Assembly: GCA_033442325.1 (NCBI GenBank) | Contig: JAWQFM010000031.1 | Location: forward strand, 531,497 to 595,496 | Length of the DNA: 64,000 nucleotides | Reading direction: 5' to 3' | Source of the DNA: Salpingoeca rosetta | Lineage: Eukaryota; Protista; Choanoflagellata | Part shown: piece by piece, positions 12,592-15,475 of the stretch | How the letters are laid out: every line of letters begins with the position of its first letter | Numbering within the stretch: the first letter of the stretch is position 1 | Notes under the pieces: model-generated | The model's database searches: none | Seen by the model: only the letters and a program-made list of their open reading frames with translations | Told to the model about the DNA's origin: nothing | Position numbers and translations under genes: made by a program

Positions 12592-12595
<4 letters not shown>

Positions 12596-13295
12596 TTGCT
12601 GCAAAGCGGGTGAAGCAGTCTGGAAGAATAAGCACGAGCGAGCCGCCCTGCCGAAGGGCACGCAGCGCAACAAGCAGCTGGTCAATCAGCGTCGGCTTGC
12701 AGTGGTTGTCTGTGACGTCGTTGCCGTCGCCATAGACCATGTCCGCGTGGTCAAGATGGATGCCGCACAGGGCAATGTCAATCGACCCATCAGGGAGAGA
12801 TGTCGTGGTGGCCGGCGCGCGGCTCATAGGGAACGGACACACAACAGTTGCTGCTGACGACGACGCAGAGGACGCGCTCGTGGCGGACGTTGTTGTGCTA
12901 TCACCACCACCACCACCACCACTGGTGCTGCTGCTGCTGTCGGGGGATGGGGCGTCAGCGTCGGTGCTGGGTTTGCTCTCATCGCTCGTCTCACCGTCAC
13001 CACTGTCCTCATGTTGCTGTTGCTGCTGCTGCTCGTTGCTGTGCGTGCCACCCACATCACCAGCAGTTAGCGCAGGGTCGCTCGTGATTGCATCGGTAGT
13101 GATCGCGTGCACGGCCTCGCACCGCTCCTCCAACAGCTGCACATACGGCACCAACGACGCGTGCAGCACGCAGCAGCGCAGCGGTGCCTGATCGAGCCAT
13201 TCAGGGAGGTGTGAGTGAGTGAGTGAGTGAGTGGGTGGCTGGCTGGGTGAAGGATACGCTTGACGAGATGCACAGAGTCAGCAGGAACCTAAAAG

Positions 13296-13367
<72 letters not shown>

Positions 13368-14526
13368 CACACACACACATTTGCATGCACACCTTCTTGT
13401 CCTTGACATCGTCTTCATCTGGCAGCAGGTGTGTGATGGCGGCGAGGTGGGCCAGCTCCAAGTACGCCACGGGAAACACAACGTGTGGTCGTTGTTCCTT
13501 CAGCAGCGCCGCTGCCGCATTGGCAACAACCCCGCACTTGAGCCCCACGCGCGCGTGTGCGTGTGTGCGGACGAGTGCGGCGACGCGTCGGGTTGCATCA
13601 CGTCGCTGCTCCTGCAGATCAATGACGACGTCCTGGCGAGAGAACTTGGAGCAGAGAATGGTGCGCAGTGGGGCACCGTGCACAATCTCCCATCCAGACA
13701 CATCCTCGTCGCTCAGCGGTGGCGGGAGTGATGTTGATGATGAGGCTGATGTTGATGTTGATGTTGATGATGACGAGCGGTGGTGCGTGTCGTATCCGCC
13801 GCTGCCGCGATCGTGCTGGTGCGGTGCACGCAGGACGAGCCAGTCGGCGTCCGTGGGCTCGCCGTCGTTGTCATCAAACCACGGGCTGCCCTCCATCCCC
13901 TCCTCAACGCCGAGCAGCCGGTGCGCGGAAAAGCCGAGACCGCCGCGCCCATCGCGCATCTCCGTGGCAATTGGCGCGTGCCGCCCCTGCTCGTGGCGGC
14001 CGAGACCACCGCCCGTGTATCCAATCTGACGCATGAGCATCTCGCCCTTGGACATCGCAGCGGCTGCGCGCCCACCGCCACCACCAACATCGCCGCCAGC
14101 CGTCGCTGTTGCTGTGCTGGTCGTTGGGGATGCTGCTTTTGCATCAGATGATGACGACGATGGTGGTGGTGGGGCTGCATCAGAGGTTGTGGCGCGGGTG
14201 AATGCAGGTGCAGCCGTGGCCTGGCCTGTCGTCGTTGTCGTCGTCTTCGTTGTTGTTGGTGACGACGACACGGGTGCTGCTGCGCTGCGTGCGTCCCCCT
14301 CGGCACCAACTGCAGCTGCGTCGACAATACGCGCATCACCTGTATTCTTCTTGTCGTCCTCGTCCGCCATCAGCCGCGCACGCTGTCGCGGTGGTTCGCC
14401 CGTATCCCACGCGCCATCATCGCCACCCTTGATCGCCGCCGTATTGCTGTTGCTGCTGTTGCTGCTGCTGCTGTTGTTGTTGCTGTTGTTGTTGTCTCCT
14501 CCGCGGCCACCGCTAGTGCCACTGCC

Positions 14527-14565
<39 letters not shown>

Positions 14566-15475
14566 GGCGGCCGGGGCCTGCGGGTTTGCGTCGCTGAATG
14601 CGCGTTTCTTGTGCTGCTGGTGGCGGGCGTACTTCTCCTGCCGCTCGCTCAGCGTGGCGCCGTCAATGCGCGAGCCAAACCCGCGGTGGGCGTGGCTGAC
14701 GACGGCGCTGGTGGCCCATGCGCTCACCTCGCGGTCGGACACGATGCGCTCGCGGCGGTGGATGGGCTGCGGGCGGTACGTGTCGAAGAAGCGCCGCTGC
14801 ACACCGCGCTTGCCATCCTTGATCGCCTGGTGGTGGCGGCGTCATGGTGTTTGGTGTAAGGGTTGGTGGTGGTGGCGTGGTGATTGATGGATGTTGGGGG
14901 ATGGATCCAAGTCAAGGAAGAAACAACGACAGAACGCCAGAGGAAGGATCACATTCATGCACGGCGTGCCATTGGGTGTTTGTTGTGTGGAGGAAAGGTG
15001 AATGCAAAACGGTGAGAGGGATTGTGGTGGCGAATGGTGGCGAATTGAGCGGGGTGGAAATTCGCGGGAGAAACACAAGCATGTGACATGACATGACGTG
15101 CAACGGCGCGAGGGTGGTGTTGTTGTTCATATTGGGTGATGGTGGGTGGCCCCATTCGCGTTGGGAAAATACAATGTGCCCGTGCGTAGAGTAAGGTGGT
15201 GCATGTGTGAGTGGGTGAATGCGGTGTCGGGACGTTGGACGTCCAATGCTTACGGTTTCATGCACACACACGCACACGCATACGCACAGACACAGACACA
15301 GACGCACACACACACACACACACGCGCGCGCGCACAGAACGCCATACATGCGCCCCCTCTCGTTCTGTTCTCGAACCTCGTCTTCCATGAATCCCTTTCC
15401 ATTCGTTTCAAGATCGATGTTTCGCTCAATGCAGTCCGTGAACCAGCGGCTGAATTGATCCGCAAGCTGCACCCA

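What the first reader, a model, noticed from the sequence alone, without database searches (positions are those of the whole stretch)
12592..14826. CMTR2 carries a G-patch in front of its dead second methyltransferase domain, a CMTR1-like module
Seen: in one exon, the CMTR2 linker is followed by a canonical G-patch and then [32 protein letters not shown], leading into a second RrmJ-like domain lacking catalytic lysines ([15 protein letters not shown]). Established: human CMTR1 has a G-patch (binding DHX15) followed by its MTase, while human CMTR2 has two MTase-like halves and no annotated G-patch. Inference: the C-terminal half of CMTR2 derives from a whole G-patch+MTase CMTR1-like unit, preserved here and eroded in vertebrates. 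It also implies DEAH-helicase coupling of cap2 formation.
Basis: partly seen in the sequence, partly recalled or inferred. Interest (0 to 1): 0.7.

Follow-up and report, generated by a model that had tools for sequence, protein, structure and literature searches.

The report
Cap methyltransferase 2 keeps CMTR1-like G-patch
This protist gene for the cap2 RNA methyltransferase (CMTR2) carries an expressed G-patch, a helicase-recruiting motif, in front of its inactive second domain; comparison with relatives indicates that the whole second half of CMTR2 is a decayed copy of the CMTR1-type enzyme, and that animals have lost the G-patch.

Summary
A minus-strand exon (13393-14826) encodes, in one open frame, the CMTR2 linker, a Pfam-significant G-patch (13933-14055) and the start of a second, catalytically dead RrmJ-like domain. 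Stranded RNA-seq covers the exon continuously, confirms its 5' splice joint, and shows no isoform that removes the G-patch.

- At least 27 of the 150 best CMTR2-type representatives carry a G-patch at the same position. They include green algae, a metamonad, an amoebozoan, a fungus and bdelloid rotifers. Several also end in a WW domain.
- G-patch-less sequences form essentially one clade, which holds every named non-rotifer animal in the set.
- A profile of the C-terminal halves matches human CMTR1 collinearly from the G-patch through the methyltransferase domain (E 4e-51). It scores far better on CMTR1 than on the CMTR2-N-type enzyme EP424R.
- One uncultured relative still has an intact K-D-K-E second domain.
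- This genome has two such genes and no CMTR1.

Helicase coupling remains an inference. I found no paper describing this, although databases annotate the domains automatically. Two other first-reader notes in this genome report a G-patch on a VP39-type cap methyltransferase; I could only partly verify that.

The parts
18108..18776 (-). First coding exon region (ATG at 18776), with an R/D/H-rich N-terminus; the 3' boundary is approximate
   Evidence: ORF list; the paralogue on contig C32 begins the same way
17751..18011 (-). Catalytic-domain exon holding the first catalytic lysine ([12 protein letters not shown])
   Evidence: translation; N-half profile A2 hit, E 1.8e-19
17365..17571 (-). Catalytic-domain exon with SAM-binding motif I ([14 protein letters not shown])
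   Evidence: A2 hit, E 5.5e-20
16599..16833 (-). Catalytic exon with WYFG...FTADGS (catalytic D)
   Evidence: translation; Pfam FtsJ E 4.6e-11; intron joint 16475->16596
16327..16478 (-). Catalytic exon with VLKMF (second K) and NAETY (E)
13393..14826 (-). G-patch exon: CMTR2 linker, low-complexity runs, G-patch and the start of the second domain in one open frame, phase 0 at both ends
   Evidence: RNA joint 14825->15376 and continuous RNA depth
13933..14055 (-). G-patch domain
   Evidence: Pfam PF01585, E 4.1e-8; genome scan; best solved match is the NKRF G-patch crystallised with DHX15, 6SH6, E 5.9e-5
13639..13698 (-). [20 protein letters not shown]: the W-x-V-x-G...S-x-F-C motif that opens the CMTR1 methyltransferase region (human [20 protein letters not shown])
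   Evidence: Profile alignments; conserved in all CMTR2 C-halves; A1 hit on the window, E 3.4e-12
13444..13467 (-). AYLELAHL: the equivalent of CMTR1 RAAMKMAN, with the first catalytic lysine replaced by E
   Evidence: by register
13188..13392 (-). Intron rich in (CA)n
   Evidence: RNA depth 0.35-0.9 against 19-60 on the flanks; GT at 13392-13391 and AG at 13189-13188
12592..13187 (-). Next exon: core of the second (dead) RFM domain. [15 protein letters not shown] lies at 12603-12647, with the second catalytic lysine replaced by I
   Evidence: A1 hit at window 12591-12743, E 4.3e-7; RNA depth 15-66
12278..12379 (-). Tentative further exon of the second domain ([23 protein letters not shown], compare CMTR1 ...KPITSRPANSERYVVCKG)
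   Evidence: Translation and RNA depth about 7. Read by eye; boundaries not confirmed
11899..12030 (-). Tentative exon with the end of the second domain (LDTLPPTS...IRTSN, compare CMTR1 VVPLEVI...MIRSNE)
   Evidence: Translation; RNA depth 4-14 and a contig piece at 11861-12054. Read by eye; not confirmed

Best explanation
The gene is a CMTR2 (cap2 ribose 2'-O-methyltransferase) orthologue that keeps the family's older architecture. That architecture is an active N-terminal RrmJ/FtsJ domain, a linker, a G-patch, and a second RrmJ-like domain that is a degenerate CMTR1-type methyltransferase. Shown here: the G-patch is real, transcribed and in frame. The same G-patch at the same position occurs in CMTR2-type proteins of distantly related eukaryotes and is missing from the clade that holds every named non-rotifer animal in the set. 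The region from the G-patch to the end of domain 2 is collinear with, and by sequence and fold closest to, CMTR1. Inferred: CMTR2 arose when a CMTR2-N-type cap methyltransferase was joined to a whole CMTR1-like unit (G-patch plus methyltransferase, in some lineages plus a C-terminal WW domain). The second active site then decayed, and animals later deleted the G-patch. Also inferred: by analogy with the CMTR1-DHX15 pair, the G-patch binds the OB-fold of a DEAH helicase (a Prp43/DHX15 orthologue). This would couple cap-proximal ribose methylation to unwinding of structured 5' ends or to snRNP/spliceosome contexts. The dead domain would act as an RNA- or cap-binding scaffold, as it does in human CMTR2, where it is required for activity.
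For: The G-patch passes the Pfam threshold. The exon is continuously covered by RNA, its splice joint is confirmed and no isoform skips it. The window's catalytic region finds CMTR2-type proteins. Local scans find a G-patch 300-370 aa after the WYFG motif in at least 27 of the 150 representatives and never N-terminal of the catalytic domain. Pfam shows the order FtsJ, G-patch, about 400 aa, then WW in P0004, Rotaria, Endogone, P0006 and P0171. It shows FtsJ then G-patch in Chlamydomonas eustigma, Pedinophyceae, Paratrimastix and Planoprotostelium. In the catalytic-domain tree, 67 of the 75 G-patch-less rows form one clade that holds all named non-rotifer animals, and the G-patch rows form the surrounding grade. 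P0007, placed near that clade's base, has a decayed G-patch. The C-half profile against PDB hits human CMTR1 85-527 at E 4.2e-51. Without the G-patch it scores 145.6 bits on CMTR1 against 31.8 on EP424R. The animal-only C-halves score 80.4 against 22.4, and the N-half profile scores 157 on EP424R against 121 on CMTR1. hhalign of C-half against N-half aligns only 152 columns. The AF2 model of a C-half (pLDDT 75) gives CMTR1 structures as its top six Foldseek hits. P0005, a single uninterrupted ORF, has FtsJ, G-patch and a second FtsJ with an intact K-D-K-E tetrad and a GGxGGF motif I. The genome has two such genes and no CMTR1, and it has at least 8 DEAH-type OB-fold helicase loci. Human CMTR1 binds DHX15 through its G-patch (PMC6232587, PMC6071836).
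Against: No tree that includes CMTR1 sequences could be built, so 'closer to CMTR1' rests on profile scores against two solved proteins and on collinearity, not on a tested topology. The tree is unrooted, made with a quick LG+G4 search, and many branches are weak, so gain against loss is argued from taxon spread, and the family is known to move horizontally (PMC3113572). The rotifer copies sit with a fungus and may be transfers. G-patches are too short to show that this one is specifically of CMTR1 type: on the G-patch alone, TFIP11 scores about the same as CMTR1. The WW domains resemble Pin1/PRPF40 types rather than CMTR1 specifically, and none was found in the window's gene. Helicase binding is untested. 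Most relatives come from unnamed metagenomic or transcriptomic sources.
Confidence: 0.75

Rival explanations
1. The G-patch is a recent, lineage-specific insertion (exon shuffling or capture) into this organism's CMTR2, with no bearing on the origin of the second domain.
For: The exon is full of low-complexity insertions, so this region clearly tolerates added sequence. Named non-rotifer animal orthologues lack the motif.
Against: The same motif lies at the same position in at least 27 of 150 representatives, from Chlorophyta, Metamonada, Amoebozoa, Fungi and rotifers, and in this genome's own paralogue. The collinear match to CMTR1 runs through the G-patch.
Confidence: 0.03
2. The second domain is an internal tandem duplicate of CMTR2's own catalytic domain, and the G-patch (and WW) were acquired independently, so the CMTR1 arrangement is mimicked by convergence.
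For: The two halves are homologous (hhalign probability 99.1, E 2e-18). CMTR1 and CMTR2 are paralogues anyway (PMC3113572). G-patch and WW are mobile modules. The WW is not specifically of CMTR1 type.
Against: The C-half profile scores 143-146 bits on CMTR1 against 32-35 bits on the CMTR2-N-type EP424R, while the N-half prefers EP424R. The C-half shares with CMTR1 the W-x-V-x-G...F-C lead-in immediately after the G-patch, and HMMER does not align that lead-in to the N-half. Foldseek ranks CMTR1 well ahead of EP424R.
Confidence: 0.12
3. The direction is the reverse. The two-domain protein with both domains active (as in P0005) is the older form, and stand-alone CMTR1 arose from it by loss of the N-terminal domain.
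For: P0005 has both domains intact in one ORF. The two-domain form is very widespread, and several lineages have it without CMTR1 (PMC3113572).
Against: Nothing here polarises the event. Stand-alone N-type enzymes exist in viruses (EP424R), and stand-alone CMTR1 is widespread, including forms without the GTase-like domain (PMC3113572).
Confidence: 0.1
4. The apparent single gene is an artefact: two neighbouring genes, an N-type methyltransferase and a degenerate CMTR1, read as one.
For: A first-stage note (s1-434456) found gene boundaries further downstream in this locus hard to define.
Against: The CMTR2 linker, the G-patch and the start of domain 2 share one open exon with no stop. That exon is spliced to the upstream linker exon in RNA reads (joint 14825->15376). 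[quoted passage not shown]
Confidence: 0.01

Closest known systems
Human CMTR2 (FTSJD1, hMTr2), cap2 2'-O-ribose methyltransferase
   Same: The order is the same: an N-terminal active RFM domain (the window has FtsJ at Pfam E 4.6e-11 and K, D, K, E all present), a linker, and a C-terminal RFM-like domain without catalytic lysines. The shared motifs are W..v.G...S.FC and LTRF.AG. In human, both domains are needed in one chain (PMC3113572, PMC3941023).
   Different: The window's protein has a G-patch and about 250 residues of low-complexity sequence in the region that in human is the 'highly divergent' stretch 431-530. Named non-rotifer animal proteins have a clean deletion there. The non-animal C-domains are also less decayed: they pass the Pfam FtsJ threshold, while the bird C-half gives no hit.
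Human CMTR1 (FTSJD2, hMTr1), cap1 methyltransferase with a G-patch that binds DHX15
   Same: The segment from the G-patch to the end of the RFM domain is collinear with CMTR1 residues 85-527 (E 4.2e-51 for the family profile). CMTR1 structures are the best fold matches. Some relatives also end in a WW domain, as CMTR1 does.
   Different: In the window this unit is the second half of a larger protein and is catalytically dead (E and I at the lysine positions, degenerate SAM loop). No GTase-like domain was seen, and no WW in the window's gene. The relatives' WW is Pin1/PRPF40-like rather than demonstrably CMTR1-like.
African swine fever virus EP424R (stand-alone CMTR2-N-type methyltransferase; PDB 9IQ4, 9W69)
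   Same: It is the best solved match of the N-terminal half profile (157 bits, including the N-terminal extension).
   Different: It has no second domain and no G-patch, and it matches the C-half profile only weakly (22-35 bits).
NKRF / TFIP11 / Spp382-type G-patch activators of DHX15/Prp43
   Same: The window's G-patch aligns along its length with the NKRF G-patch crystallised on DHX15 (6SH6, E 5.9e-5) and keeps the conserved glycines and the hydrophobic helix.
   Different: The proteins are otherwise unrelated. Which helicase this G-patch binds, if any, is unknown.

Membership tests
CMTR2 (hMTr2/FTSJD1) family | N-terminal RrmJ/FtsJ-type domain with the K-D-K-E tetrad and a SAM motif | tested here: met
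   Pfam FtsJ E 4.6e-11. Exon translations show [28 protein letters not shown] and NAETY. The A2 profile hits four exons at E 1e-32 to 2e-19.
CMTR2 (hMTr2/FTSJD1) family | C-terminal non-catalytic RFM-like domain in the same polypeptide | tested here: met
   The A1 profile hits window 13597-14061 and 12591-12743. The lysine positions are replaced. The exon is spliced to the upstream linker exon in RNA reads. The last third of the domain was read only by eye.
CMTR2 (hMTr2/FTSJD1) family | Closest relatives are CMTR2 orthologues rather than CMTR1 or FTSJ1/3 | tested here: met
   The top representatives (E to 7e-41) include proteins named CMTR2 or 'cap2 methyltransferase' and share the two-domain layout. 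The window falls among them in the tree.
CMTR2 (hMTr2/FTSJD1) family | Methylates the ribose of the second transcribed nucleotide | not testable with these tools
   This needs an enzyme assay. The genome has no CMTR1, so the position specificity of its two paralogues is open.
G-patch domain (PF01585) | Glycine-rich consensus of about 45 residues scoring above Pfam's gathering score | tested here: met
   33.5 bits against a cut-off of 22, profile positions 2-43 of 45; 38.2 bits in the genome scan.
G-patch domain (PF01585) | Binds and activates a DEAH/RHA helicase through its OB-fold | not testable with these tools
   Only supporting facts are available: the alignment to the DHX15-bound NKRF G-patch and at least 8 OB_NTP_bind helicase loci in the genome.
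CMTR1 (hMTr1/FTSJD2) family, applied to the C-terminal half | G-patch directly upstream of the RFM domain, with the CMTR1-type lead-in | tested here: met
   One collinear stretch to CMTR1 85-527, E 4.2e-51; window motif [20 protein letters not shown].
CMTR1 (hMTr1/FTSJD2) family, applied to the C-terminal half | Active K-D-K-E tetrad and SAM-binding loop | tested here: not met
   The window has E and I at the two lysine positions. Among 26 G-patch-bearing relatives the first K is kept in 4, and only P0005 keeps all four residues plus the glycine loop. The half is derived from, not a working member of, CMTR1.
CMTR1 (hMTr1/FTSJD2) family, applied to the C-terminal half | C-terminal GTase-like domain and WW domain | tested here: inconclusive
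   WW is present at the extreme C-terminus of several relatives but was not found in the window's minus-strand frames 4000-13200 or in the paralogue. There is no room for a GTase-like domain between the RFM and the WW in relatives. CMTR1 forms without that domain are known (PMC3113572).

The most novel reading that the evidence does not exclude
CMTR2 began as a natural fusion of two working cap methyltransferases: a CMTR2-N-type domain and a complete CMTR1-type unit with its helicase-recruiting G-patch. Some living protists (P0005-like proteins with both K-D-K-E sites intact) would then still make cap1 and cap2 with one helicase-coupled polypeptide. In CMTR1-less lineages such as this one, the G-patch-bearing CMTR2 paralogues would carry out all cap-proximal ribose methylation together with a Prp43/DHX15-type helicase.
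Probability: 0.35. Interest if true: 0.8.

Novelty: new variant of a known kind. Interest (0 to 1): 0.62.

Why it matters
The role and origin of CMTR2's essential but inactive second domain have been open since 2011. Reading it as a decayed CMTR1, complete with G-patch, has four consequences.
- It gives the domain a concrete ancestry.
- It predicts that cap2 formation was originally coupled to a DEAH helicase (and, where WW is present, perhaps to the phosphorylated Pol II tail). This fits recent links between human CMTR2, snRNPs and splicing (PMC12592727).
- It offers an explanation for how organisms without CMTR1 can still modify caps.
- It points to natural two-active-site enzymes that could be assayed directly.

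It also shows that automatic naming calls some of these proteins 'CMTR1', possibly because they combine G-patch and FtsJ.

Tried and rejected
- The word-indexed protein search with the G-patch-to-domain-2 part of the exon found nothing, probably because low-complexity words swamped it.
- The same tool with the C-half alignment returned only two CMTR2 proteins and no CMTR1.
- The first tree run with the mixture model was killed for memory. I used LG+G4 with a quick search instead.
- A WW profile was tested as a further CMTR1 link. It matches Pin1/PRPF40/TCERG1/PCIF1-type WW domains best, and CMTR1 is not among the top 60, so I do not count WW as evidence of homology with CMTR1.
- The G-patch alone does not discriminate between CMTR1 and other G-patch proteins.
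- The fold was done on a close full-length relative (P0004:478-918), not on the window's own protein.
- No tool named the organism. My guess of a choanoflagellate (55.4 Mb genome, CMTR1 absent as reported for Monosiga) is from memory only.
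Full report
WHAT IS THERE

The window is eukaryotic, with (CA)n-rich introns. A multi-exon gene lies on the minus strand.

Its upstream exons encode an FtsJ/RrmJ methyltransferase domain (Pfam PF01728, E 4.6e-11) with all four catalytic residues and the SAM loop visible in the exon translations: [33 protein letters not shown].

The exon at 13393-14826 is one 478-codon open frame. In order, it holds:
- a CMTR2-type linker;
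- long alanine, serine, threonine and asparagine runs;
- a G-patch ([42 protein letters not shown]; Pfam PF01585, E 4.1e-8, 33.5 bits against a cut-off of 22; window 13933-14055);
- [20 protein letters not shown];
- AYLELAHL.

After a 205-base intron, the next exon (12592-13187) holds [18 protein letters not shown]. The only correction is that 12592-14826 spans two exons and an intron.

IS IT EXPRESSED AS READ?

Three stranded RNA-seq runs of the same species label were laid on 11001-17000.
- The first mate lies on the plus strand, as expected for a minus-strand RNA in the usual stranded libraries.
- Depth is continuous over 13401-14826 (about 3-50 per bin) and falls to 0.35-0.9 in the intron bin 13201-13400.
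- A joint at 14825->15376 (GT..AG on the minus strand; 12, 14 and 1 reads) fixes the exon's 5' end at 14826.
- Further joints define introns at about 15806-16038, 16476-16595 and 11228-11466.
- The only 'joints' inside the exon have 20-base sides, non-canonical ends and extra letters at CAG-type repeats, so I read them as cross-mapping.

The refuting result 'transcripts splice out the G-patch' was therefore not seen. Short reads cannot exclude a rare isoform.

IS THE G-PATCH PECULIAR TO THIS GENOME?

No. A full HMMER search of 1.84 billion cluster representatives with the catalytic exons (read by reference through an in-frame intron) gave 1827 hits, of which the best 150 were listed.
- A regex, a phmmer search and then a local HMM find a canonical G-patch in at least 27 of these 150. 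It always lies 300-370 residues after the WYFG motif and never N-terminal of the catalytic domain.
- Named carriers are Chlamydomonas eustigma, Pedinophyceae sp., Paratrimastix pyriformis, Planoprotostelium fungivorum, Endogone sp. and the bdelloid rotifers Rotaria, Adineta and Didymodactylos.
- Pfam confirms the order FtsJ, G-patch, about 400 residues, and in five of nine proteins tested a WW domain at the very end (local scan).
- Named proteins without a G-patch are all animals: a bird, a starfish, a tunicate, a hydrozoan and an ostracod.

A catalytic-domain tree of 105 rows (LG+G4, quick search) puts 67 of the 75 G-patch-less rows into one clade that contains all those named animals. The G-patch rows form the surrounding grade, and the window falls among them. 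The label needs 6 changes (4 forced by starred branches) against 26 for shuffled labels.

The rotifer proteins sit with the fungus Endogone at 100% SH-aLRT support. That looks like a transfer into bdelloids rather than retention in animals.

In the alignment of C-halves, the named non-rotifer animals have a clean gap where the G-patch sits. P0007, near the base of the animal clade, has a visibly decayed G-patch.

The window's own genome (55.4 Mb, 68 contigs) has a second gene of the same kind on contig C32, also with a G-patch.

IS THE SECOND HALF CMTR1-LIKE?

I aligned 75 C-terminal halves, from the G-patch (or the equivalent point) to the end, as A1, and 65 N-terminal halves as A2. I then searched the sequences of solved structures with each profile.

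| Profile | Human CMTR1 | ASFV EP424R (CMTR2-N type) |
|---|---|---|
| A1, all C-halves | 177.4 bits, E 4.2e-51, full length 8P4E, one stretch to residues 85-527; 142.8 bits on the crystal construct 4N48, which lacks the G-patch | 34.6 bits |
| A5, 26 G-patch-bearing C-halves, G-patch cut off | 145.6 bits | 31.8 bits |
| A4, 39 animal C-halves only | 80.4 bits | 22.4 bits |
| A2, N-halves | 121.5 bits, second half of the RFM only | 157 bits, including the N-terminal extension |

The A1 stretch to CMTR1 runs through the G-patch, the W-x-V-x-G...F-C lead-in and the whole methyltransferase domain.

Further results:
- hhalign of A1 against A2 aligns only 152 columns (E 2e-18).
- An AlphaFold2 model of P0004:478-918 (pLDDT 75, pTM 0.67) has CMTR1 entries as its six best Foldseek matches (E 5e-12 to 4e-10), ahead of EP424R (about 1e-5) and Spb1/FTSJ1.
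- A language-model feature search on the same stretch (P0004:478-918) lists a 'CMTR2' cluster with G-patch in 96% of members, and next an arthropod CMTR1 cluster. Both scores are under 0.9, so this is a lead only.

The two halves therefore have opposite preferences between the same two reference enzymes. This is the expected result if the C-half belongs to the CMTR1 lineage and is not a copy of the N-half. It is not a phylogeny.

HOW DEAD IS THE SECOND DOMAIN?

In the window the two lysine positions are E and I. In the C32 paralogue the second lysine position is C (read by eye).

Among the 26 G-patch-bearing relatives:
- the aspartate is kept in 22;
- the second lysine position is K in 12 and R in 11;
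- the glutamate position is E in 11 and D in 11;
- the first lysine is kept in only 4.

The SAM loop is mostly degenerate.

One protein, P0005, keeps K-D-K-E and a GGRGGF loop. Its C-half gives a full-length Pfam FtsJ match preceded by a G-patch and aligns to CMTR1 89-503 with all catalytic positions matched. It is a single uninterrupted 3630-base ORF on a metagenomic contig.

This gives a series from intact (P0005), through partly decayed with the G-patch kept (most protists and fungi, and this window), to strongly decayed without a G-patch (animals; the bird C-half has no Pfam hit).

MECHANISM

Shown: the domain order, expression, conservation and the similarity to CMTR1.

Inferred: the G-patch recruits and activates a DEAH helicase.

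The basis for the inference is:
- the established role of G-patches, and of the CMTR1 G-patch with DHX15 in particular (PMC6232587, PMC6071836);
- the full-length alignment of the window's G-patch to the NKRF G-patch solved on DHX15;
- the presence of at least eight OB_NTP_bind helicase loci in this genome.

The dead domain probably serves substrate binding, as proposed for human CMTR2, where both domains are needed in one chain (PMC3113572, PMC3941023).

Profile searches of this genome find RFM matches of either type only at this gene, at its C32 paralogue and, weakly, at an FTSJ-type locus on C6. No G-patch hit lies upstream of an FtsJ hit. CMTR1 therefore appears to be absent, as was reported for Monosiga (PMC3113572).

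WHAT IS KNOWN

Werner et al. 2011 described hMTr2 as two RFM domains. They called residues 431-530 'highly divergent' and noted CMTR1-less organisms that have hMTr2 orthologues. The only G-patch the paper mentions is CMTR1's, and I found no proposal there that the second domain derives from a CMTR1-type unit.

Full-text searches for CMTR2 or FTSJD1 with G-patch returned only papers in which the G-patch is CMTR1's.

Databases do hold the automatic domain hits, and UniRef names the rotifer proteins 'CMTR 1'.

I therefore class this as a new variant of a known kind: undescribed in the literature I could search, but visible in automatic annotation.

LIMITS
- Exons were searched one by one by reference.
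- The fold is of a relative, not of the window's protein.
- The 3' exons of the gene (about 12278-12379 and 11899-12030) are read by eye from translations and RNA depth, and the stop codon was not fixed.
- The tree is unrooted and quick.
- No tool named the organism.

Noticed in passing
G000:C32:291000-300999 (L008); G-patch at C32:296974-297081: A second CMTR2-type gene in the same genome. It has the same R/D/H-rich start and the same catalytic exons. Its final exon is 1551 codons long and contains a G-patch, an RS/RD-rich stretch and the dead second domain (...ALVCLPDTLSRLGAG...). It has no WW.
   Followed up: partly
Whole genome G000: No CMTR1-type gene was found. Both the N-half and C-half profiles find RFM matches only at the C31 and C32 genes and, weakly, at an FTSJ-type locus on C6. 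How cap1 is made here is open.
   Followed up: partly
G000:C7:1905516-1905716 (-): A poxvirus VP39-type (PF01358) cap methyltransferase match (38 bits) in an 866-aa open frame. Two first-stage notes (s1-432440, s1-440368) say a VP39-type enzyme in this genome is fused to a G-patch, but the Pfam G-patch scan of the genome lists no hit on C7. The fusion is therefore unverified and the enzyme itself is supported.
   Followed up: partly
L009:651-4280 (P0005, JGI metagenome contig): A single ORF encodes a cold-shock-like domain, an FtsJ domain, a G-patch and a second FtsJ with an intact K-D-K-E tetrad and a glycine-rich SAM loop. It is a candidate two-active-site cap methyltransferase.
   Followed up: partly
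P0017, P0041, P0051, P0172-P0175 (bdelloid rotifers) and P0173 (Endogone): The rotifer G-patch/WW CMTR2-type proteins group with a mucoromycote fungus at 100% SH-aLRT support, away from other animals. This suggests horizontal acquisition. UniRef labels them 'methyltransferase 1'.
   Followed up: no
P0004, P0006, P0017, P0171, P0173 C-termini; P0008 residues 100-130: The WW domains on CMTR2-type proteins are closest to the phospho-CTD-binding Pin1/PRPF40/TCERG1/PCIF1 type. This hints at recruitment to RNA polymerase II.
   Followed up: partly
window 4934-12600 (-) and 18937-20397 (+): Downstream minus-strand exons continue without an obvious stop or start after the CMTR2 C-domain (first-stage note s1-434456 suggests a fusion with a DUF3883-type gene). 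RNA depth and a joint at 11227->11467 show transcription there. A divergent plus-strand ORF at 18937-20397 had no Pfam hit.
   Followed up: no
window 14228-14258 and 13015-13033: Many RNA reads end here with loose ends of GTC/GCT/GTT repeats, and there is a strand-specific T>G difference at 14246. These look like reads from other trinucleotide-repeat loci rather than variants of this gene.
   Followed up: no
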